This document shows positions 4,509 to 54,620 of a stretch of 64,000 bases of DNA, piece by piece. The notes below the pieces were generated by a model that was not told the DNA's origin, made no database searches, and worked only from the letters and a program-made list of their open reading frames with translations. The DNA is from Octopus sinensis (taxonomy: Eukaryota). Where the stretch lies: assembly GCF_006345805.1 (NCBI RefSeq), contig NC_043005.1, positions 10,850,001 through 10,914,000 of the forward strand. Direction: 5' to 3'. Position numbers and translations under genes: made by a program. Every line of letters begins with the position of its first letter. Position 1 is the first letter of the stretch.

Positions 4509-4902
4509 TTACTCTTTTACTTGTTTCAGTCATTTGACTGCGGCCATGCTGGAGCACCACCTTTAGTCGACCAAATCGACCCCCGGGACTTATTCTTTGT
4601 AAGCCTAGTACTTATTCTATCGTCTCTTTTGCCGAACCGCTAAGTGACGGGGACATAAACACACCAGCATCAGTTGTCAAGCAATGCTAGGGGGACAAAC
4701 ACAGACACACATATACATATATATATATATATATACATATATACGACGGTCTTCTTTCAGTTTCCGTCTACCAAATCCACTCACAAGGCATTGGTCGGCC
4801 CGGGGCTATAGCAGAAGACACTCGCCCAAGATGCCACGCAGTGGGACTGAACCCGGAACCATGTGGTTGGTTAGCAAGCTACTTACCACACAGCCACTCC
4901 TG
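4509..4902 (-). mobile_element. SINE family A, full length
   Basis: Reverse complement of family A. Confidence 0.9.
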
Positions 4903-5378: not shown

Positions 5379-5635
5379 CTATACATATTTACCCCCAGAT
5401 GAACCTACTTCAGGGCAAGAGGTGCAAATGAGAGTAGCTATATCAAACTCCATTCTTCACCAAGTGCCACATATTAGACAAGGTTCTTCGCAATAGCAGT
5501 GTAGCACAAAACGGCGGTGCATCAGCATGGCCACAACTCTGAGCTGAAACCAGAGAAAAAAAAATATATATATGTATATACATATGTGTATATATATATG
5601 TGTATATATGTATATATATATATGTGTATATATAT

Positions 5636-8100: not shown

Positions 8101-8183
8101 GATAAATAATTTCATAGAGACTGTAGAGGAAGGCTTGTTTGTGTTAATTTTTGCTCCTGTTACTACTTCTTGTTCCTTAACAG

Positions 8184-8207
8184 TGGTGCCCACATTCCAC
8201 CCAAAGT
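8184..8207 (+). CDS. Candidate 24-nt microexon in the FN1-FN2 linker ((x)VPTFHPK)
   Basis: Pyrimidine tract + ttaacag acceptor, AGT|gtatgt donor, frame-preserving and stop-free if the upstream intron is phase 1; no transcript evidence. Confidence 0.4.
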
Positions 8208-9915
8208 GTATGTCACCATTACATTGACATCATCAACATAATACTGGCCTGGTTGTCTTGCATCTCTGTTTGAACAGGAAGCCTGTCCATACAATAACCC
8301 CCCCCCCCGCCATATCTTAAGAGAGGAATGCAAGTGAATTGCTTGGCTGTGGTTCTTATTTCAGCTGCTGAGGGCCCAAACGTAAAAGCTAACCCCAGCT
8401 GGATTTGAACTCCTATAAATAAAGGAATGTATGTTGTATGCTGCAAGGGGATTTATTGTGATGCTCTGCTAATTTTAGTGCATAATAATATTTTTAACTT
8501 TGGCACCTAACCATAAATTTTCAGAATATGATGTAATAAGTTAATTCACCCATTCGTATTTGTTTTATTAATTCTGGAGAGTCTTAGAGAAGATTATATC
8601 GATTGCAACTAACTACAGCAAGTTTAAATACCTGTATGTGTTTCTTTTTGTTGGCCCTGAGGCAGTTTTTAATTAACATCAAGAAATGTGATATCATCCT
8701 CTTTCACTACAGATATTATCCTATTTTGGGAATATTTTATCTCAATATAGCTTTTAATTAACTTTTTTCCTTTCTAATTTAACAGTAACATCAGTAATAA
8801 CATATTCCGGTTGGATTTGTTTGTTTTTAATTTTTATGAAATGAAATTATTATACTTATTAAAAATGTAAACATAGTAGAGGAGGGGGAGTAAAATTCAT
8901 TATTGATTGTAGTTTATTGTGTGTAATGAAGAAATGGTTGATGTCAAAATGTGTGTTCACTATATAGCATCTTCATGAGAGTTTCCTATTTCCTTAGCAA
9001 TAAATTCAGTTATTACTTGTTATGGAAGACTGTTCTGAAAACATCACTGCAGGAAAATTTATTCAAACTTGGAAAATCTCCAAAAAGGCAGTTCCGATAT
9101 AATTTGTTTTAAGATCGGATTAGTGGACATGCATATGGAAATAAATGAAGTAAAACATTTTAGCATGACATTGTTACAATTACAAAGAATTTTTCATTTT
9201 TATTTTTATGGTAAAGGTAAAAGATTAAAAAATAATGTCTAGAATGATTGTATATTTTCTATCGAGTTATCTGTTTATGCATAGGAGAAACCTTATACAA
9301 TTTTTTTTAAATGTCACACTCTTATCAGTAAACTGGGTTTTCCTTTTTCAAGAAAACCACCATTTTATTTTGATTTTTTAAAATTAATTTATGTTATCAA
9401 TTTTTTGGCAAATCTTTTTTTCAAGAACCAGTTCTCTCTTATCTTTTGTTATATTTCTGTTGAAATATGCTGACTTTGTTTCAATTAACTGAAGAATTTA
9501 AAACTAAAATAATTTGGTCATTAAGTCGGTGTTTGCAACAAATTAACATAAAAATTTTGATAGAAGGTCTTTAACTTATGGTACAAACAGGAAGGTTGGT
9601 ATCAAAAGAGCCAATGTCATTGCTTGGTGCTATCTTGTGACTTCATGATTTTGCTTTCCTGAAAATTGGTGATAATTTTTTGAGTCCTTTGCCAATATAT
9701 TTACATTTTTTAAATTAGCTAATAATTCCTATCAGTGGACTTGTTGTTCACTTCTGTCTCACCTTAGTTTATAATGTTTATCTAATATCAGTTATATTAA
9801 CCATTAATTAACTTAAGAGTATTGATGTTTTAGTAGAGAAATTATACTAGTGTTCATTTATGTCATTTAAAATGATGTGATTGTTAACCAACTGTTTTTT
9901 CCTTTAAACTTTCAG

Positions 9916-10016
9916 CCCCAGGAACAGCTCCAAGGAATTTGCGTGGAAGAGCTGCTAGTGCAACCACCATATCTTTGGAATGGCAAGAACCCGAAATTCC
10001 GAATGGAATAATTGAG
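9916..10016 (+). CDS. Lar: LAR-family receptor tyrosine phosphatase, exon encoding N-terminal half of FN3 repeat 2
   Basis: ttcag|CC acceptor and GAG|gtaagc donor; translates (x)PGTAPRNLRGRAASATTISLEWQEPEIPNGIIE, matching LAR FN2 ([34 protein letters not shown]); phase 1 start, phase 0 end. Confidence 0.93.
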
Positions 10017-13414: not shown

Positions 13415-13680
13415 ATCATCATCATCATCATCATCATTTAGCGTCCGTTTTCCATGCTAGCATGGGTTGGACGGTTCAACTGGGGTCTGTGAAGCTGGAA
13501 GGCTTCATCAGGCCCAGTCAGATCTGGCAGTGTTTCTACGGCTGGATGCCCTTCCTAACGCCAACCACTCCGTGAGTGTAGTGGCTGCTTTTTACGTGCC
13601 ACCCGCACAGGTGCCAGACAGAGCTGGCAAATGGCCACGAACGGATGGTGCTTTTACGTGTCACCAGCACGGGGGCCAGA
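13415..13680 (-). mobile_element. SINE family D with (ATG)n tail
   Basis: (CAT)n followed by ttagcgtccgttttccatgctagcatggg..ggatgcccttcctaacgccaacc; copies at 21408, 35500 and 44454. Confidence 0.85.
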
Positions 13681-16294: not shown

Positions 16295-16496
16295 GGATAT
16301 AAAATATTCTATACTTTGAATCCAGATCTCCCTATTATTCTTTGGGACCATAAAACCCACAACAATGGCCAGAATAAAGTGGAAACTCTTCTTAACTTGA
16401 AAACAAACAGCACATATACTATAACCATTTTAGCTTTTTCTAGTGCTGGTGAAGGTCCTCTTTCAGAAGAAATTCAAGTAATGACAAATCCTGGAG
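16295..16496 (+). CDS. Lar: LAR-family RPTP exon, C-terminal half of FN3 repeat 2
   Basis: Poly-T tract + gcag|GGA acceptor, G|gtaatg donor; GYKIFYTLNPDLPIILWDHKTHNNGQNKVETLLNLKTNSTYTITILAFSSAGEGPLSEEIQVMTNPG, in frame with the previous exon; aligns by eye to LAR GYRVYYT...LAFTAVGDGPPSPTIQVKTQQG. Confidence 0.95.
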
Positions 16497-21262: not shown

Positions 21263-21407
21263 AAGTATTACATCATCATCATCATTTAATGTCCATGTTC
21301 CATGATGGTATAGGTTGGATGGTTGGACGGATCCAGTGGATCAGAGGACTGTGTCATGTTCCAGTATTTGTTTTGTCATGATTTCTATGCCTGGAATCAT
21401 CATCACC

Positions 21408-21596
21408 ATCATCATCATCGTTTAACGTCCGTTCTCCATGCTAGCATGGGTTGGACAGTTCGACCGGGGATCTGGGAAGCCAGAAGGCTGCACCAGGCTC
21501 CAGTCTTATCTGGCAATGTTTCTACAGCTGGATGCCCTTCCTAACGCCAACCACTCCATGAGTGTAGTGGGTGCTTTTTACGTGCCACCTGCACAT
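21408..21596 (-). mobile_element. SINE family D fragment
   Basis: (CAT)n tail plus family D core. Confidence 0.85.
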
Positions 21597-23902: not shown

Positions 23903-24621
23903 TGTTATATATAAATATATATATATGTTATATATATGCGTATATAGGATATATATATATTTAATATATATAATATATATTATATATATGTTATATATAT
24001 ATATATTATTGATATATGGATATATGTAATAATTTACATATATGATATATAATATATATATATATATACACACACACATATATATCTTTTTTTTTAATTA
24101 TTGATTTCTGCCTATGGATTTGTTGTTTATGTGCGGGATGTTCAAACACTTGCATCATTTCGTATTGCTGAAATCTCTTGTGTGTGTTTCAGTTCCAGTG
24201 AATAAACCTGTTATATTTGATCGTAAGTAGTTCTGAAAAGTATGGCATTTATAATATTTATTATTATTATCATTATTAATAATATTACCATCATATAAAC
24301 CTCCATGTCTTTATACAGTGCTCCTATATGGTGCATGTTGCTGCATATTTTTTAAAATATTTTTAGTAGCCTGAAGTCCTGTAGATTGTGACTTTCAAAT
24401 ATCTTCTGACAGTCTTGAACTGGCCTTTGTTTTTTGCATCAGTTATTACTTGTATCAATTTTGTCTAGCGTACGTACATGTAAATTTTTGCGCTGCCGCT
24501 ATATACTACTGCGAAGATGCCAGCATGCTTGCCCTTTGCTTTGATCTGCTGCCTGCTGCTGCTGCTGCTGCTGCCGACGCGTTGCACTGCGCGATCGTTA
24601 CAAATCAGTTTCTTTCTGCAG

Positions 24622-25424: not shown

Positions 25425-27569
25425 GTGGTTGGTAAAAGTCTTCCCTCCAATATTTACCTCTTTCTTTCTTTTGTTTTTTTTTTAAAGTAGTCTGGACATT
25501 AAGTCGTATTAGTTTTATTGACATCCTCTAGCGATGGCATTGTAAAAACAAAAAGCCTTGTCTAAAGACTCTTCAATTTATTTATTTTTATTTTCCTTTC
25601 CCTTCTTATATCAAACAATATTATTTTGATTAAAAGGAATTTCAATATATTAGAAATTATCAAAAATGTTATTTACAAAGTCATTTTTTGGCCTAAAATT
25701 TGGATGAAAAGATAATACAAATAAACATATTTATAAAAATATGAGGAAATCAATTTAAAATTCTGAAAAAAATAACTGAATAAAAGTAATGATTAAATGA
25801 ATTTTCTATTATTCTTCTAAACAAACTGTATTTTAAGATGTTATGGGATTGTTTTACTTGTGAAACAGTTGTGCATAGTTCCTGAGGAAGTTTTTCACAA
25901 CTTTTATTTCATAAAGTGTAGCCATTTTCCACCAAAATGCTTTTTTTCTTGTCATGCATATAGTTTTACTGAGATACATTGAAAAATTGTTATATTTATA
26001 AAACTTTTATGAAATTCTAGCGTAATTCAGGTGGTTGGAGCTGAAAGAAAAACCTCATTTCATAAGCTCTTATGCATTTTTTATTTAATACTTAAATTTA
26101 AGCAAACAGTGTGATTGTATGTACATGAGTCTATATATGTATTTATGTATACTTGGTTATATACATATGCATGCATATGTTATGTGCCTTTATACATATA
26201 TTCAGACAGTATACATTAATTATCAGAAAAAGGATTGTAAATGCCTTGAATTCAACTAATGATCTAACTTCATAACTAAAACTGATTGTTTACCAAGTAA
26301 ACAGCTAATAATGTAGACTAAAAAATGTTCCGCTATCTCATAGTATGTAAATTTAGCTTGTATCCTTTTTCTGATTTATCAGTTGTTATGTAACTTAACT
26401 CAATTGGTAATCTCTGCTATGAGAATCTAATTGTAACTATACATAGTAGTTTACAGATATTAAATTGTTAACTAATAGATCTAGATTAATAAGTGACAAC
26501 AGTAAAATGGCTGCTTTACTGTCTTTTCCTACTGCATAATAGTAATAATAATAATAATAACAATAATAATAACGATATTAAATAATACTAAATAATTATA
26601 ACCTCACAAACATGTGTGCTGAATTCAAAGATTTGTGATTTCAAGAGATTAAATTGGCTTTTCACAAAAGTTTGTGACTATTAAGTTTAAGAATAATTCT
26701 TAATCTAACTGCTTGTGTGTAACATCACATACACATCTAGCTAGTTATGAAGAACCTATGTCTTTTCATTATAGTTCATGTTTCTTTCTTTTTTTTTTTT
26801 TTTCACCCTTTCCTGGTGATCAGAGCTGTGTGCAGTCTGTAACTTATATCCTGTGACATTTGACATATTCCAATATGTTTGTCTCAGTTACATCCACACT
26901 AAGCTCTTGCATATGATTGCTATACATTTTTTCCTCCTGATCTTAAATTCCTACATTCTACAGTTTGAGGTGGACAAGATGTTCATAAACATTTTGCCTC
27001 AAATTCTTGTTACAACCTTAACGCAGAAGCCGCACCTTATACTTTTCTTCTAGCGCTTTCATTTCATTGCTTTACTGCTCTCCTTTTAGTGTAGGATAAA
27101 TAGCTTCTCTTCTCTCTTCCTCATCTTCCAACTTCTACAATGGATTACTAGCTATATTAATGCGCTATTGATGACTATGTTTTGGGGATTGAAATTTAAT
27201 TCTTTTATGATTTCTTCTAGATCATTCCAAGACCGAAGAAAAACAAAATTTTACTTTATTCTCATTCTGAGAAAAGAAATATTCTGGTTTACACTTGAGA
27301 AATTTATATCATGTGTTTTCAATGTCTATGCGCATTTGCTGTAAAAATATATTTTCCTGCAATACTTACTTATTATTAACAACATGCTATGAAGAAATTG
27401 ACCTGCTTAGTTACAAGTTTATAAGTCAGTGCTATCCTGACAGTATTAAAAGCGCAGTTTATTGGAGAATAGTTTTCTCTAGCTTACTCATAGATCCCTC
27501 CCCATGTATTGTGTAGTTCATCTATCTAACTATGCTGCTCAGATATTATGCTCTTGCTACATAGGGAAC

Positions 27570-27965
27570 TATATATATATATATATGTATACGTGTATAT
27601 ATATATATATATATACATACATATATTTATATATATATATACATATATATATATATAACTATATATATATATGTATGTATATATATATATGTACATGTAT
27701 ATATATATATATAACTATATATATATGTATATAGTATTCATATATATAGTATTCATGTATGTGTGTATATATATATATATATGTGTGTACACACACATGT
27801 ATATAGTATTCATATATATAGTATTCATGTATGTGTATGTGTATATATATATATATATATAATATATATATATATATGTACACACACATATATGTATATA
27901 GTATTCATATATACATGTAAATATATATGTATATATATATATATATAATCATATATAATATTCAT

Positions 27966-28039
<74 letters not shown>

Positions 28040-28130
28040 TACATCTCGTTCGGAGATTTATTAATGCTTATATATATATATATATATAATATGAATATGT
28101 ATAATAGTCATATATATACATGAAATTTAC

Positions 28131-28167
<37 letters not shown>

Positions 28168-28341
28168 ATACACACATATACATATAATGGTTATATATAT
28201 ATATGATATTCATAGATGCATACGTATATAAGTACATACATATATATAAATACATATGTATATATGCGTGTACACTTGTGTGTGTGTATATATAAACAAA
28301 CACATATATACATGTGCCTATATACAATATATGTATATATT

Positions 28342-28375
<34 letters not shown>

Positions 28376-28720
28376 AATGCTTATGTATATATGTGTGTGC
28401 ACTTGTGTCTATATATATATATATATATATATAAACACATATATACATGTGCCTATATACAATATATGCATATACACATATGTATATACACACACTTAAA
28501 CATATATGTATGTACATATATTGATATATTATATGTGTATGTATATATATGTTTATATATGTGTATATCTGCATATTTAAGTGTATATGTGTGTATGCAT
28601 ATGTATATACATTTATTTATTTATATATATTTATGTGTATGTGCATATATATAATTATATATACACACTCACGCACATATTTATGTGTGTATATACATAC
28701 ATATATATATATATATATTG
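27570..28720. repeat. Large compound (TA)n/(TG)n/(CA)n microsatellite field with local tandem re-duplications
   Basis: Near-continuous TA/TG/CA dinucleotides, pure (TA)n around 27969-28036, repeated TATATAGTATTCAT blocks. Confidence 0.95.
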
Positions 28721-28993
28721 AGCTGCTTGTGATTCTTATTACTGATATTTTTATACCTGCCAATTTATTAATGTTCAGCACACATGGAAATAGTTGAATA
28801 TTTAGAAAATATCTTGGTATTTTCATCTTAGTCAATTAATCTGAATGTAAGGCTTGATTGGTAATTAATAAATGCGCGTGCGCAGCCTTTCTCTTTGCAT
28901 ATAATGTACCATTGATCGCTAATATTAACACCATATTTTTCCTATTCATTATACTAATCTTCGTTTTTCCTTTTTCCATCCATTGTCCTGCAG

Positions 28994-28999
28994 AATCAG
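28994..28999 (+). CDS. Candidate 6-nt microexon AATCAG (inserts ES: NPG-ES-VPQQP)
   Basis: TACTAAT branch point at 28952-28958, AG-free pyrimidine tract, ctgcag acceptor, CAG|gtgagg donor, frame-preserving. Confidence 0.6.
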
Positions 29000-29538
29000 G
29001 TGAGGCCAATTACTAAACTTTCTAATTTCTTTTCAGCACATAATTTATGTATATTTTTTTTTTACCACTATCATTAATTATACATATGTATTTTTTTTAA
29101 AATTTTAAGCTAATCTGCAGAATAATGCATTAAGATTCTGCTACTTGATGCAATATGATTGTAGCAGTAGTTATTTCGTCCTTTTTTCATTTTTTTTGTA
29201 TTCGTTCTTTTTCCTTTTTTTTTTCCTTCTTTTGTAATCAAAATAATTACCTATAGTTTTTGTTTTTTGTATTTTTTTTTTTGGTTTTTTGCGTATGTCC
29301 TTTACATGATTTTGAGGGGACATTCGTGAAAACACTCTGAAAGAGTGAGGTGTAGATTGTTATTTTTGTTTCGTGGCTTTGCATTCTCTGCCACTTGTTC
29401 CAATTTATGATGTGTGTGTCTTTTTTTGTAATATATTTGTTCTCTTGTTCTTTTACTAACATCTTAGTGTTAGGTCTAAAACTCTATTACTAACCCCCCT
29501 GCCCATCAATCGTGGCTAATTAAAACAATTACTGATAG

Positions 29539-44453: not shown

Positions 44454-44790
44454 TCATCATCATCATCATTTAGCGTCCGTTTTCCATGCTAGCATGGGCT
44501 GGACGGTTCAACTGGGGTCTGTGAAGCCGGAAGGCTGCATCAGGCCCAGTCAGATCTGGCAGTGTTTCTACGGCTGGATGCCCTTCCTAACGCCAACCAC
44601 TCCGTGAGGGTGCTTTTTACGTGCCACCCGCAGCTGGCAAACGGCCACGAACGGATGGTGCTTTTACGTGCTACCAGCACGGGGGCCAGGTGAGGCTGGC
44701 AACGGACACAAACGGAGGGTGCTTTTACGTGCCACCGGCACGGGGGCCAGGCGAGGCTGGCAACGGACGCGAGCGGATGGTGCTTCTACA
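44454..44790 (-). mobile_element. SINE family D with short internal tandem units
   Basis: (CAT)n tail, family D core, repeated GGTGCTTTTACGTG units. Confidence 0.88.
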
Positions 44791-46317: not shown

Positions 46318-46602
46318 TCCCCCAACAGCCGAAAAATCTCCAGGCTCTTGCAGAGTCTGCAAATACTGTACATGTGACTTGGGATCGACCAGATGCAATG
46401 GATAATATCGAGAGCTACGAGCTATATTATAACGATTCCCACTACCGCCAGAATGTTCACATAAGTATTAAACCGCCTGTAGTAAGTTACCGTTTAGTTG
46501 ATCTTACACCCGATACAGTATACCACGTTCAAGTATCAGCAAAATCCTTACGTGGAGAAGGAGCACGTACCCCAACAATTCAAGTTAGAACACCTCAGTT
46601 CG
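46318..46602 (+). CDS. Lar: LAR-family RPTP exon, FN3 repeat 3 (symmetrical phase 1-1, 285 nt)
   Basis: ttatag|TC acceptor, G|gtaagt donor; VPQQPKNLQALAESANTVHVTWDRPDAMDNIESYELYYNDSHYRQNVHISIKPPVVSYRLVDLTPDTVYHVQVSAKSLRGEGARTPTIQVRTPQF, like LAR FN3 (VPAQPADFQAEVES...LKPDTLYRFQLAARS). Confidence 0.96.
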
Positions 46603-50760: not shown

Positions 50761-52489
50761 TTTCTGACGTTATGCACACACACACATACGAGAGGCTTCT
50801 TTCAGTTTCTCTACCAAATCTGCTTGTAAAGCTTTAGTCAGCTAGAGATTGTATTGTGAGACACTTTAAGTGTCATGCTGAATCTGGAGCTATGCTTGTA
50901 TCTGTTGAAATTTGAATAAGCAATAAGTGCTTGAATTTTGAAAGTAAATGATGATGATGATGATGATGATGATGATATGATGAAAACTTAGTAGCTGCTG
51001 TTTCAAATTTATTGTAGTAAGAAAAGTTGTAAGAGAATCACTTCTGGGAGTCTGATGGGGGGAAAATATTGATTTTTTTTTTTTTTGTGATGTAAGGTCA
51101 CAAATTTGTTGAAAGAAATCTATTTGATTGGATTGACTCATTCCTGTCCAGCACAGAATTGTAAAGATGAAAGGCAAAATTGACACCGACTTGATTTGAA
51201 CTCTAAATATGAAGCTGCAGAACTAAAAGCTGTAAACCTCTCAGCTATTTTTATTACCCCATTGCTTTTATTTTTATTATAAAAAAAAAATATGAGGGAC
51301 ACAAGGAAGTGTAGTTTCGAGTGTTTAAATGTATATTGATCTTGAATTTACTAGAGATGCTAAGCCATGTTGCCAAGTTGCTGTTTAAAAGGCCATTTTA
51401 AAAAATTATTTACTCACATGGACAAGTTAATTTTATGGAAGATAGTTATGTTTGATGAGATTTAATAGAGCTTTTTAGTGTCATAAAGAAGACTCGAGAC
51501 ATTTTGCTTGCATTAACAGCATTCATTTTATGTGTAGGAATGCTAAATCTATTTAAATTGTTGCAACATACAGCAGTAGTATTTAGATCGTTTTCATATC
51601 ATCAGCATCATTAACATGTTAGAATGTATATGCAAAAAAAAAAGGAATGTTACTTTAGGGATAATATGGCTTCTAATGAACTGAAAGGCCACTTTGGAAT
51701 TAAAAGGTTCATGTAATTTACATCACGACTGAAATAGCACAGATCTGTGAGGAAGAAAAGATAGCCAAGTTTCGGGGATTGTTGCTAACGAAGATTGTTG
51801 GGTTAGTCTGACATTAAAACTGCTTTTGATAAGGATAAAAGCGATAAAACATTCATAGTTGCTTGATAAAAGTAATTTTGAAAATGTTGATGAATTCTTG
51901 AACCCGATACTGTTTGAGATTAAATATTCTAACACTTCCTCAAGCATATCATAGGTATGTGATATAAGTTTTACGCGGCTGCTTTAGTGTCCTTTCTTCA
52001 TTATGGATTTTTAAATTGGTTGAAAAGATTTAGAGAAATTTTATTTAGGAAATGCTTGAAAAGTGATATTATCAATAAGAATATAATTATGATTTATTTT
52101 TTTAGTATATCTAATCTTTAGAGATGAACAGATTATATACATACATACATATATATATACTGCATTTCATTGAGTTTCATCTATGGTATTCTTTAAATAT
52201 GATACATTTCCTAGATGTATTGTATAATATATGACTAAAACTACACTTGAGTCAGCAGCCTATAATAGTTATATCTCCATAAGGCAGATGCTTAAAGCTT
52301 TTCCAAAGGAGGCTTTTATTTACTATTCAGTCTTACATAGGTTGGGCAAAACTACATTATTTTCACTATGTGTATACACATCCAGAAATATCTACTTATA
52401 AAATAGTTTCTCCTAAAATGACACTTGCTGTATTTTCAGTTTGTTAAAAAAACATAAATGTGAAAAGTATCTTTCTTTAGCTATTTTAG

Positions 52490-52520
52490 ATATATATATA
52501 TATATATATTTTCATCATAT

Positions 52521-52588
<68 letters not shown>

Positions 52589-52647
52589 CTGTATATGTGT
52601 GTGTGTATATATATATATATATAATATATATATTATATGTATCTGTA

Positions 52648-52693
<46 letters not shown>

Positions 52694-52704
52694 GTATCTG
52701 TATA

Positions 52705-52749
<45 letters not shown>

Positions 52750-52750
52750 C

Positions 52751-52796
<46 letters not shown>

Positions 52797-52910
52797 ATCT
52801 GTATATGTGTGTATATATATAATATATATGTATCTGTATATGTGTGTATATATATATATATATTATATATGTATGTATGTATCTGTATGTGTGTGTGTAT
52901 ATGATAATAT
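52490..52910. repeat. Compound microsatellite / minisatellite (TATATGTATCTGTATATGTGTG + (TA)n units)
   Basis: Repeated GTATCTGTAT core separated by variable (TA)n. Confidence 0.92.
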
Positions 52911-52999
52911 ATATATCTGTGGGAAAAAGTAACAAAAATAATACGCTGGAATTGTAGTGGGAAGTGGAGTAGCTTCTGTTTTTAGCTGAGGCCTTCTGG

Positions 53000-54620
53000 C
53001 TAAAGATGACCAGGGAAAAATAAAAGAAAGAGGAGAGTTTTACATCCTTAATGTAAAACTGGCTGCAAGTAATGAGGAACGCAAGATGTGAGATTGCACA
53101 CATAAACTGGAAGAAGTAGAGAGAAACTAGGTCTTGGGGTGAAGGAAAGAGCAATCAAAAGAGGAATGAGCGGGAGTGAAGTGAAGGGGGAAATTTGAAT
53201 TAAGAGGAGAGCTGAACCACAAGAATGACACTACTGAACTAAAAAGAGGTGTAGCAACAGAAATGAAAACAGTCATTGAAGCCCATCAGTGACATAGATT
53301 TGAATTTTGGCATGAAATGTTTCTTGTATTTCCTTGAACCTGCAGATTTAAAATCTGTGAGAGATGCCACACTGTAATAAATGTGTAACAGAATTGCCTG
53401 TTGTACTGAAGTCGGTGATGATAAGTTGGCCTAGAACTTCTATTAGTCTGCGTCAAATGTTCATTAAGATGACAGCCTGTTCTCTAAAGTCAAGTACACC
53501 ACAAAGTTTGTGGATGATGCGGTTGGAAAGTGTGCAGCAGAAATTTTAGGGTACTGTTGTGCTATGATTTGAGCCTTGCGATGTAGTGCTGTTAATGTTG
53601 AGTCAGGTGTTGCATTGAAGGCAAGTTCATTTAAAAGTTCCTTATTGTGTATGGCTTCTAACTAGGTGGTTGTCGAGTCACTATCTTTCTTGAAGAGAAG
53701 GTGAGGTGAGGTGGTGTGGGGAAAGATTGGAGCATCAGAAAGTAGGATTTGGAAGTTGTGGGTGAATGTGTTTCAATGGGTGAGTGAGTGGGTGGGTGCT
53801 GGTGAGAGAAACTGGCTATGTGCAGGAATAACAACTGATCAAGGTACACTTGATTGAGGAATTCTTTTATAGTGATTGAGATTCGAAATCCAAATCAGAA
53901 CCTGCAGAGCCAGGGAAACTGAAAGAATTAAGGGAATGATATAAGAGATTTAGTGTCCATGTGGTGAGAATCGATTTACTTGTAGTGGACAGTAATAGAT
54001 ATTATTGTTAGTGATAGAGATATTGAGAAAACTGAAAGTTTCAGATAGATTGGAAAGTGAAAAGAGTTAATGAAAGAATTGGACTTATCAAGCTATTGTC
54101 TGGTGAGGGTGGTAACACTGACATAGTCATCAATATAATAACAGCTCTGGAATGGGTTCCATGAAATGAGCAAAGATTTCTCTTCAATTTGGCCCGCAAA
54201 ATGCTTGGCATAATTGGGGTCCATCTTTGTACCCATAGCATCCCTACTAACTTGTTTGTAATATTCACCAGATAAGGAATAGCAATTAAGGGGTAATACA
54301 AGTTCAACTCAGCAGATGAATGTTGTAGTACTCGATACAGGTCAGGGATGGTGATCTAGAAAGTGTTTAAGGGCTGATGGGCTATCACTGTGGGTAAATG
54401 GCCAGGGATGGTGATCTAGAAAGTGTTTAAGGGCTGATGGGCTATCAATGTGGGTAAATGGTTGTGTGGACTGGTTTTAATGTCCATGGTAAGAATGATC
54501 TTTGACTACCCAGGCAGAAAAGACAATGAGTTGAAGGGTTTAGGTCATGGTTGATAACTCTATTGTATGAGAGTGAGACAGTGACTAAGAGTGGTTATAT
54601 TTTGTCAAAATATGCAGTGA
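53000..54620 (-). mobile_element. Decayed Penelope-like retroelement (RT plus possible GIY-YIG remnant)
   Basis: Minus frame ELVLPLNCYSLSGEYYKQVSRDAMGTKMDPNYA..YYIDDY (AMGT 54228-54239, YIDD 54126-54137); downstream RTGCHLNEHL-like remnant; many stops and frameshifts; ends approximate. Confidence 0.85.

What the first reader, a model, noticed from the sequence alone, without database searches (positions are those of the whole stretch)
28920..29010. 6-nt microexon AATCAG (Glu-Ser) with textbook splice signals
Seen: TACTAAT branch point (28952-28958), a ~33-nt AG-free pyrimidine tract, CTGCAG acceptor, six bases, then CAG|GTGAGG donor. It converts NPG-VPQQ to NPG-ES-VPQQ. A CpG-rich motif (GCGCGTGCGCAGCC) lies upstream. 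This is the strongest single microexon candidate. Gene predictors usually miss exons this small, so it may be unannotated (inference).
Basis: partly seen in the sequence, partly recalled or inferred. Interest (0 to 1): 0.75.

Follow-up and report, generated by a model that had tools for sequence, protein, structure and literature searches.

The report
Six-base microexon in LAR phosphatase gene
A six-base stretch deep in a 30-kb intron of a LAR-type receptor phosphatase gene has the hallmarks of a tiny alternative exon adding Glu-Ser to the hinge between two fibronectin domains; equivalent tiny exons sit at the same spot in other invertebrates, but no transcript data could be checked.

Summary
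The flanking exons are the second half of FN2 (16295-16496) and FN3 (46318-46602) of a LAR/type IIa RPTP. AATCAG (28994-28999) would therefore turn NPG|VPQQ into NPG-ES-VPQQ at the FN2-FN3 linker.

With a home-made splice-site matrix, this site is the best of 10,774 AG-N(3-30)-GT sites on both strands of the window. A score this high arose in 2 of 300 Markov simulations of the intron. The site is not in a repeat.

The strongest support is comparative. In nine other invertebrate LAR loci with a complete FN2-FN3 intron, the intron holds a single AG|GTGAG site. Each is preceded by an in-frame AG 3-15 nt upstream, giving exons of 3, 9, 12 or 15 nt that are conserved within lineages. Each of the seven loci with a detectable long exon also carries it as a 21-27-nt microexon upstream. 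The octopus-like window has that exon too (24199-24222, VNKPVIFD).

No transcripts of this species or close-relative DNA for the site were reachable, so inclusion, tissue specificity and regulation are inferred. Vertebrate mini-exons meA-meD lie elsewhere, so this is a new site of a known kind.

The parts
16295..16496 (+). Coding exon for the second half of fibronectin domain FN2 (GYKIFYT...QVMTNPG). It ends in phase 1 (..CCTGGAG|gtaatg).
   Evidence: It aligns to PTPRS, PTPRD and PTPRF FN2, and to the transcript-derived protein P0047.
24199..24222 (+). Upstream 24-nt candidate microexon TGAATAAACCTGTTATATTTGATC (VNKPVIFD). Acceptor ttccag, donor gtaagt. A tandem acceptor 6 nt upstream would give a 30-nt form.
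   Evidence: It is a homologue of the 21-27-nt exons VNRKPIFH, ALLRPVFD, DGKIGIFD, VLDIGIFD and others in the same intron of eight other loci. The search criterion found 0 matches in 398 kb of control sequence.
28874..28887 (+). GC-rich block GCGCGTGCGCAGCC. Its AG is the last AG before the acceptor, so it marks the 5' edge of the AG-free zone.
   Evidence: TGCGC/GCGCA motifs also lie 55-75 nt upstream of the short exon in L001, L006 and L002. This is weak, post hoc support.
28952..28958 (+). Branch-point consensus TACTAAT (contains CUAAY). The branch A lies about 36 nt upstream of the acceptor AG.
   Evidence: The motif class is described for eMIC-dependent exons in PMC8797185.
28959..28991 (+). 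33-nt polypyrimidine tract (85% C/T) ending in UGC directly before the acceptor (ccTGCag). It lies within a 106-nt AG exclusion zone (28886-28991).
28992..28993 (+). Acceptor AG.
28994..28999 (+). 6-nt candidate microexon AATCAG. In phase 1 it inserts Glu-Ser. After the 24-nt exon it would read Gln-Ser.
29000..29005 (+). Donor GTGAGG (CAG|GTGAGG). It is one of only four AGGTRAG sites in the 29.8-kb intron.
46318..46602 (+). Coding exon for the whole FN3 domain (VPQQPKNLQ...VRTPQF), phase 1 to phase 1.

Best explanation
AATCAG (28994-28999) is a genuine in-frame cassette microexon of a LAR-type (type IIa) receptor tyrosine phosphatase gene. It is the second of two ordered microexons in the 29.8-kb intron that separates the FN2 and FN3 domain exons.

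Inclusion lengthens the FN2-FN3 interdomain linker by two residues, from NPG-VPQQ to NPG-ES-VPQQ. Together with the upstream 24-nt exon (VNKPVIFD), the gene could make four linker variants.

Shown:
- The splice-signal anatomy.
- The reading frame.
- The statistical outlier status of the site.
- The conserved two-microexon layout of this intron in other invertebrate LAR genes.

Inferred:
- That the exon is actually spliced in.
- That inclusion is alternative and neuron-biased, promoted by the Srrm234 eMIC domain acting on the UGC next to the 3' splice site. An exon this short cannot be recognised by ordinary exon definition and depends on strong flanking signals.
- That the insert tunes the length or flexibility of a hinge in the ectodomain, and so ligand geometry, by analogy with vertebrate meB.
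For: 1. Anatomy. The site has a TACTAAT branch point, a 33-nt tract that is 85% pyrimidine, a 106-nt AG-free zone, UGC abutting the AG, and a CAG|GTGAGG donor. This combination of a long AG exclusion zone, UGC close to the 3'ss, a long polypyrimidine tract and a strong CUAAY branch point is the cis code reported for eMIC-dependent microexons in flies, and largely in mammals (PMC8797185).

2. Outlier status. The site ranks 1 of 10,774 AG-N(3-30)-GT sites on both strands of the window. Its signals are stronger than those of the two neighbouring real exons. Simulated introns reached its score in 2 of 300 runs. It is not in a repeat. Only four AGGTRAG sites exist in the intron. The only other one with a usable acceptor lies in an interspersed repeat (44454-44786), and that block has no counterpart in the aligned relative L008.

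3. Position. The FN2|FN3 boundary is a phase-1 intron shared with vertebrate genes.

4. Comparative evidence.
- In nine other loci with a complete FN2-FN3 intron, there is exactly one AG|GTGAG site, always with an in-frame AG 3-15 nt upstream. The encoded inserts are AGYQ, AGYQ, AGFQ, ANP, AGP, VGP, VSP, A, and AIPGS.
- Counting the window's two sites, 11 of 11 such sites in these introns have an in-frame upstream AG, against 8 of 21 in control sequence, about 6e-4.
- Within lineages the exon is conserved while the introns are otherwise unalignable.
- Between L001 and L006, the best-conserved island in the intron (84% over 151 nt) is centred on the short exon.

5. Shared upstream exon. The window has the upstream 21-27-nt exon found in eight of the other loci. 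In all 8 loci that carry both exons, window included, it lies upstream of the short exon. The search criterion matched 9 times in 98 kb of these introns and 0 times in 398 kb of control sequence.
Against: - No transcript evidence was reachable for inclusion in this or any other species. The one transcript-derived protein I found, P0047 from another species, shows the skipped form MTRQG|VPLQP.
- There is no nucleotide-level homology between the octopus-like 6-nt exon region and the other loci. Orthology of the short exon therefore rests on position and architecture only.
- Its peptide (ES) starts with Glu, while seven of the nine comparator exons start with Ala and two with Val.
- Six nucleotides is near the lower limit for exons.
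- The intron is T-rich, so pyrimidine tracts are cheap.
- My scoring matrix is generic.
- The site was chosen post hoc by a reader who was looking for such signals.
- L024 has no AG|GTGAG site at all in this intron.
- The taxa of the comparison loci are unknown.
Confidence: 0.7

Rival explanations
1. The site is a chance pseudo-exon. A T-rich 30-kb intron happens to place a consensus donor six bases after a good acceptor, and the site is never used or is used only as splicing noise.
For: - There are 82 AG-N6-GT sites in the intron.
- Pyrimidine runs are common in the window, with negative AT skew.
- 2 of 300 simulated introns reached the same score.
- There is no nucleotide homology to the short exons of other species.
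- There is no transcript evidence.
Against: - It ranks 1 of 10,774 sites, with a large margin over every non-repeat site.
- It lies in exactly the intron, strand, frame and order (downstream of the conserved 24-nt exon) where nine other loci carry a short AG...AG|GTGAG exon.
- It combines the branch point, AG exclusion zone and UGC features. Only 1 of 3,324 + strand AGs matches its acceptor score together with an AG-free zone of at least 100 nt.
Confidence: 0.2
2. The exon is real but not regulated. Either it is constitutively included, so the normal protein reads NPGESVPQQ, or it serves mainly as a stepping stone for removing the 30-kb intron in two or three pieces.
For: - Its splice signals are stronger than those of the neighbouring constitutive exons.
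- The intron is very long, and the two microexons divide it into pieces of 7.7, 4.8 and 17.3 kb.
Against: - A transcript-derived protein from another species lacks any insert at this junction (P0047).
- Arthropod-like genes have a tiny intron or none here, so the insert is dispensable for the fold (P0070, P0084).
- The exon does not begin with GT, so a 5' splice site is not rebuilt after the first step, as recursive splicing requires (sequence).
Confidence: 0.08
3. The true counterpart of the short exon in this species is the 12-nt CACGGGGGCCAG|GTGAGG at 44678-44689 (ARGP), whose peptide looks more like AGP and ANP. On this reading the 6-nt site is a decoy.
For: It has the same donor score as the 6-nt site, it is in frame, and it starts with Ala like seven of the nine comparator exons.
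Against: - It lies inside an interspersed repeat with copies at 13422, 21407, 36083(-) and elsewhere.
- The 333-bp block 44454-44786 has no counterpart in the aligned contig L008.
- Its acceptor is weaker, with an AG-free zone of 42 nt.
Confidence: 0.02

Closest known systems
Vertebrate LAR-RPTP mini-exon meB (4 residues, ELRE or DQRE, between Ig2 and Ig3 of PTPRD, PTPRS and PTPRF)
   Same: - It belongs to the same gene family.
- It is an in-frame microexon that lengthens an interdomain linker of the ectodomain rather than a domain core.
- meB extends a flexible hinge and switches ligand binding (PMC8711739; PMC4239663).
   Different: - The position differs: FN2-FN3 instead of Ig2-Ig3.
- The insert is 2 residues instead of 4.
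- There is no sequence similarity.
- No ligand or functional data exist here.
- Inclusion has not been shown.
Vertebrate LAR-RPTP mini-exons meA (Ig2), meC (FN5) and meD (before D1)
   Same: They are short neuronal cassette exons of the same family. meC also lies in the fibronectin region.
   Different: None of them lies at the FN2-FN3 junction. Two reviews place meC inside FN5 and meD next to D1 (PMC8711739; PMC12598525). The resemblance of 'ES' to meA3 'ESI' is coincidental.
eMIC (Srrm234/SRRM3/SRRM4)-dependent neuronal microexons
   Same: - The length is 27 nt or less and preserves the frame.
- It has a long AG exclusion zone.
- UGC lies next to the 3' splice site.
- It has a long pyrimidine tract and a strong CUAAY branch point (PMC8797185).
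   Different: - Dependence on eMIC and neuronal inclusion are untested.
- The donor is very strong, as in mammalian microexons. Fly eMIC exons have weak 5' splice sites.
- In several of the other species, UGC is not adjacent to the acceptor.
Recursive splice sites and RS-exons in long introns
   Same: It is a short element in the middle of a very long intron, with juxtaposed strong 3' and 5' splice signals.
   Different: The exon begins with AATCAG, not GTRAGT. No 5' splice site is regenerated at the junction with the upstream exon. The element is in frame and is conserved as coding sequence in relatives.

Membership tests
[quoted passage not shown] | An ectodomain of Ig domains followed by FN3 domains, with closest similarity to PTPRF, PTPRD and PTPRS. 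| tested here: met
   The concatenated exons match PTPRS 4pbx (E = 1.1e-39, residues 420-574), PTPRD 4yh7 (7e-38) and PTPRF 6tpw (3e-36) across FN2 and FN3. Other FN3 proteins score far lower. The phosphatase domains lie outside the window and were not seen.
Cassette microexon (27 nt or less, frame-preserving) | An AG acceptor and a GT donor flanking 3-27 nt, with a length divisible by 3 and no stop in frame. | tested here: met
   The exon is 6 nt and reads G|AA TCA G|TC between two phase-1 junctions.
Cassette microexon (27 nt or less, frame-preserving) | Found in mature mRNA, with both included and skipped forms. | not testable with these tools
   No transcripts of this species were found in the protein collections or in JGI contigs. 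There, one gapped pattern covering the 0-, 6-, 24- and 30-nt forms matched nothing.
Cassette microexon (27 nt or less, frame-preserving) | Evolutionary conservation of the exon and its flanks above the intron background. | tested here: inconclusive
   A positional counterpart is conserved in nine other loci, and is sequence-conserved within lineages. DNA from a close relative covering this site could not be reached. No nucleotide homology spans the deep lineages.
eMIC/SRRM4-type neuronal microexon | The cis code: a long AG exclusion zone, UGC near the 3'ss, a long pyrimidine tract and a strong branch point. | tested here: met
   The AG-free zone is 106 nt, UGC sits at -5 to -3, the 33-nt tract is 85% pyrimidine, and the branch point is UACUAAU. 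The code is as described in PMC8797185.
eMIC/SRRM4-type neuronal microexon | Neuron-enriched inclusion that depends on the Srrm234 eMIC domain. | not testable with these tools
   This needs tissue RNA-seq and perturbation of the factor.
Vertebrate LAR-RPTP mini-exons meA-meD | A location in Ig2 (meA), between Ig2 and Ig3 (meB), in FN5 (meC) or before D1 (meD). | tested here: not met
   The insert lies between FN2 and FN3 by alignment to 4pbx, 4yh7 and 6tpw. The mini-exon positions come from PMC8711739 and PMC12598525.
Recursive splice site / RS-exon | A 5' splice site is regenerated when the upstream exon is joined to the site, which requires the exon to start with GTRAG. | tested here: not met
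   The exon starts with AATCAG, so the junction GGAG|AATCAG is not a donor.

The most novel reading that the evidence does not exclude
The FN2-FN3 hinge of invertebrate (probably spiralian) LAR receptors carries an old pair of cassette microexons. One is a 21-27-nt exon with a GTAAG donor. The other is a very short exon with a GTGAG donor that has changed length in steps of three bases (3, 6, 9, 12, 15 nt) between lineages while keeping its frame, order and donor type.

Together they would give a four-state 'linker code' at a flexion point of the ectodomain. This would be a counterpart, at a different hinge, of the vertebrate meA/meB splice-insert code that selects synaptic partners. The window's 6-nt exon would be the cephalopod version.
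Probability: 0.5. Interest if true: 0.6.

Novelty: new member of a known kind. Interest (0 to 1): 0.5.

Why it matters
LAR-family phosphatases are presynaptic hubs. In vertebrates their partner choice is set by tiny splice inserts (meA, meB).

If invertebrates with a single LAR gene, including cephalopods with large brains, vary a different hinge (FN2-FN3) with their own microexons, it would be a clear case of the same gene being diversified by microexons at different sites in different lineages. In RPTPsigma, FN3 folds back at this linker, and the linker was proposed as a flexion point (PMC4239663).

It also gives a concrete target for annotation, because exons of 3-12 nt are routinely missed. 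It gives four junction sequences that can be looked up directly in RNA-seq data.

Tried and rejected
1. Transcript-derived proteins spanning the junction. Two searches of the large protein collection returned almost only single-exon genomic ORFs. The one spliced protein, P0047, shows the skipped form in another species.

2. DNA of a close relative at the microexon.
- Exact look-ups of the two window ORFs that overlap the site found nothing.
- A six-frame translation of 28731-29510 used as a protein query found nothing.
- A related cephalopod contig, L008, exists but covers only the FN3 exon region.

3. JGI metagenome contigs. I scanned for all four possible spliced junctions of this species with one gapped pattern. 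There were no hits, so the result is uninformative.

4. Deep nucleotide homology of the microexon region to other loci. None was found above shuffled controls. The apparent TACTAATCT..TTTTTC similarity to L001 and L006 is only shared signal consensus.

5. RNA structure around the exon. The z-score was +1.0, so there is no evidence for structure. Rfam gave no hit in the window.

6. Recursive-splice-site reading. Rejected because the exon does not start with GT.

7. The 12-nt ARGP candidate at 44678. Rejected because it lies in an interspersed repeat, in a block with no counterpart in the aligned relative L008.

8. Taxa of the comparison contigs. I could not identify them. A literature search for the WGS prefixes found nothing.

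Full report
**Observation.**
- TACTAAT is at 28952-28958.
- A 33-nt tract at 28959-28991 is 85% pyrimidine.
- CTGCAG is at 28988-28993.
- AATCAG is at 28994-28999.
- GTGAGG is at 29000-29005.
- GCGCGTGCGCAGCC is at 28874-28887.

It runs 106 nt, from the AG inside the GC-rich block to the acceptor. A UGC sits directly before the acceptor (ccUGCag).

**Host gene and reading frame.**
- The upstream exon (16295-16496) encodes GYKIFYT...QVMTNPG.
- The downstream exon (46318-46602) encodes VPQQPKNLQ...VRTPQF.

Joined, they match solved structures of PTPRS (4pbx, E = 1.1e-39), PTPRD (4yh7) and PTPRF (6tpw) far better than any other FN3 protein. The match covers the second half of FN2 and all of FN3. 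An earlier exon at about 9915-10016 encodes the first half of FN2.

The candidate therefore lies in a 29.8-kb phase-1 intron, exactly at the FN2|FN3 domain boundary. Fish-like genomic ORFs that read from ..KTQQG into 'GEMC..' show that vertebrates have an intron at the same place.

**Is it more than chance?** I scored every AG-N(3-30)-GT on both strands with a simple log-odds model of the 3' and 5' splice sites. The frequencies came from general knowledge and were not trained on this species.
- The candidate is the best of 10,774 sites.
- Its donor score is reached by only one other GT in 128 kb.
- It is the only AG that combines its acceptor score with an AG-free zone of at least 100 nt.
- Both of its signals are stronger than those of the two flanking real exons.
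- Order-3 Markov simulations of the intron reached its combined score in 2 of 300 runs.
- The region is not repeated in the window.

Only four AGGTRAG sites exist in the whole intron. Two have no usable acceptor. The fourth (44678-44689) lies in an interspersed repeat with several copies in the window. Its 333-bp block (44454-44786) has no counterpart in the alignment of L008, a Logan contig that otherwise aligns at 82%.

**Comparative evidence.** No DNA of a close relative covering the site could be reached. The large collections did hold LAR loci of other invertebrates, on long ENA contigs and JGI contigs whose taxa I could not identify.

In each of the nine other loci with a complete FN2-FN3 intron and an AG|GTGAG site, there is exactly one such site on the coding strand. 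Each is preceded by an in-frame AG 3-15 nt upstream.

| Locus | Short exon | Length | Insert |
|---|---|---|---|
| L001, L006 | CTGGCTACCAAG | 12 nt | AGYQ |
| L010 | CTGGTTTTCAAG | 12 nt | AGFQ |
| L007 | CCAACCCAG | 9 nt | ANP |
| L009 | CCGGTCCAG | 9 nt | AGP |
| L016 | TCGGCCCAG | 9 nt | VGP |
| L086 | TCAGCCCAG | 9 nt | VSP |
| L011 | CAG | 3 nt | A |
| L002 | CAATACCGGGTTCAG | 15 nt (21 nt with an upstream AG) | AIPGS |

- Counting the window's two sites, all 11 such sites in these introns have an in-frame upstream AG, against 8 of 21 AGGTGAG sites elsewhere in the same loci. The hypergeometric probability is about 6e-4.
- Within lineages the exon is clearly orthologous. Mismatch-tolerant searches with the L001 or L007 exon plus its splice sites hit only the candidate positions in L006/L010 and in L009.
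- The introns themselves are otherwise unalignable.
- Between L001 and L006, the best-conserved island in the intron (84% over 151 nt) is centred on the exon.
- One locus, L024, has no AG|GTGAG site in this intron.

**A second microexon.** While following a 23-nt perfect match between the L007 and L009 introns, I found a longer exon with a GTAAG donor in the same intron.

| Locus | Length | Insert |
|---|---|---|
| L007 | 24 nt | DGKIGIFD |
| L009 | 24 nt | VLDIGIFD |
| L016 | 27 nt | VLGVEGIFD |
| L024 | 27 nt | VLDQEGIFD |
| L086 | 27 nt | VLHLEGVFD |
| L006 | 24 nt | VNRKPIFH |
| L010 | 24 nt | ALLRPVFD |
| L001 | 21 nt | VGPPRYD |
| Window (24199-24222) | 24 nt | VNKPVIFD |

- The descriptive criterion for this exon matched 9 times in 98 kb of FN2-FN3 introns and never in 398 kb of control sequence.
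- In all eight loci that have both exons, the long exon lies upstream of the short one.

The window therefore shares the two-microexon layout of this intron. The 6-nt site sits exactly where the short exon is expected. It has the GTGAG donor type that the short exon has in every lineage, while the long exon always has GTAAG.

**Limits.**
- Inclusion has not been observed. The only spliced protein I found across this junction, P0047 from another species, is the skipped form.
- Arthropod-like genes have a minute intron or none here (P0070, P0084), so the inserts are optional for the fold.
- The 6-nt exon region has no nucleotide homology to the other loci.
- Its peptide begins with Glu rather than Ala or Val.
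- The GC-rich block recurs only loosely. TGCGC/GCGCA motifs lie 55-75 nt upstream in L001/L006 and L002 but not in the other lineages.
- No RNA structure stands out, with z = +1.0.
- Rfam found nothing in the window.

**Mechanism (inferred).** An exon of six bases cannot be defined across the exon in the usual way. The signals present are a distal strong branch point, a long pyrimidine tract, a long AG exclusion zone, UGC at the acceptor and a near-perfect donor. These are the ones reported for microexons whose inclusion is driven in neurons by the eMIC domain of Srrm234/SRRM3/SRRM4. That system is dated to the bilaterian ancestor (PMC8797185).

The product would be a LAR ectodomain whose FN2-FN3 linker is two residues longer and carries an acidic residue. 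With the 24-nt exon there are four possible linkers:
- NPG-VPQQ
- NPG-ES-VPQQ
- NPG-VNKPVIFD-LPQQ
- NPG-VNKPVIFD-QS-VPQQ

In the RPTPsigma Ig1-FN3 crystal structure, FN3 folds back on FN2, and the authors proposed the FN2-3 linker as a flexion point (PMC4239663). Linker length there could plausibly change ectodomain geometry. Vertebrate meB does this between Ig2 and Ig3 (PMC8711739).

**Comparison with what is known.** The described vertebrate mini-exons are meA (Ig2), meB (Ig2-Ig3), meC (inside FN5) and meD (before D1). None is at FN2-FN3, so this is not a member of any of those four.

It is a microexon of the same general kind, in the same gene family, at a new site. My literature searches found no description of it. 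I could not check whether automated annotations already list such isoforms.

**Verdict.** The microexon reading is supported by statistics and, more strongly, by a conserved intron architecture, but it is not yet proven by transcripts. I put the probability that it is a genuinely spliced exon at about 0.7. Interest is moderate at 0.5.

Noticed in passing
window 24199-24222 (+); tandem acceptor at 24191-24192: A second, 24-nt in-frame microexon candidate (TGAATAAACCTGTTATATTTGATC, VNKPVIFD, donor gtaagt) lies in the same intron. Its own splice scores are weak (rank 46). Homologous 21-27-nt exons occur in the same intron of eight other invertebrate LAR loci. Including it changes the next codon from Val to Leu, or to Gln when the 6-nt exon follows.
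   Followed up: yes
window 44454-44786 (+); copies near 13422-13679, 21407-21593, 36083-35727(-): This is an interspersed SINE-like repeat. The copy at 44.5 kb carries a strong exon-like site (ag|CACGGGGGCCAG|gtgagg, 44678-44689). Its block has no counterpart in the alignment of contig L008, which otherwise aligns at 82%.
   Followed up: partly
window 29110-29123 and 29011-29036 (+): About 120 nt downstream of the microexon, CTAATCTGCAGAAT repeats the branch-point core and the acceptor plus exon start (CTAATCT...CTGCAGAAT) without the pyrimidine tract. Directly after the donor there are two branch-point-like motifs (TACTAAA, TTCTAAT), a T-run and a CAG at 29034-29036. Their meaning is unknown.
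   Followed up: no
window 28874-28887; L001 about 5416-5436; L006 about 4713-4733; L002 about 8180-8193: GC-rich TGCGC/GCGCA-containing blocks lie 55-120 nt upstream of the short exon in three lineages. In L001 and L006 the block GCGCAGTGCTTTGCGCG is identical and could form a small hairpin. In L002 it is a 14-nt palindrome, ATGATGCGCATCAT. The block is absent in the other lineages, so the support is weak and post hoc.
   Followed up: partly
L050 2587-2613, L052 1689-1715, L082 2654-2680: A divergent group of LAR-like loci from JGI contigs carries a conserved 27-nt exon with a gtaagt donor in the corresponding intron, encoding DVEKEFNPD, DVEEAFNPD and DVEEDFNPD. No short GTGAG exon was seen there.
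   Followed up: partly
L005 4056-4076 and L011 9768-9788: Two 21-nt in-frame AG...GT segments (DNRHVYA and DNRQLYV) are 15/21 identical between two distant loci. They may represent a further microexon in this intron.
   Followed up: no
window 27500-28720 and 52400-53000: Long TA/TG-rich microsatellite-like tracts read as YIYIYI/VCVC in ORF lists. One lies directly upstream of the microexon region. The other causes the GC-skew spike at 52-54 kb. Such tracts probably break short-read contigs of relatives near the site.
   Followed up: no
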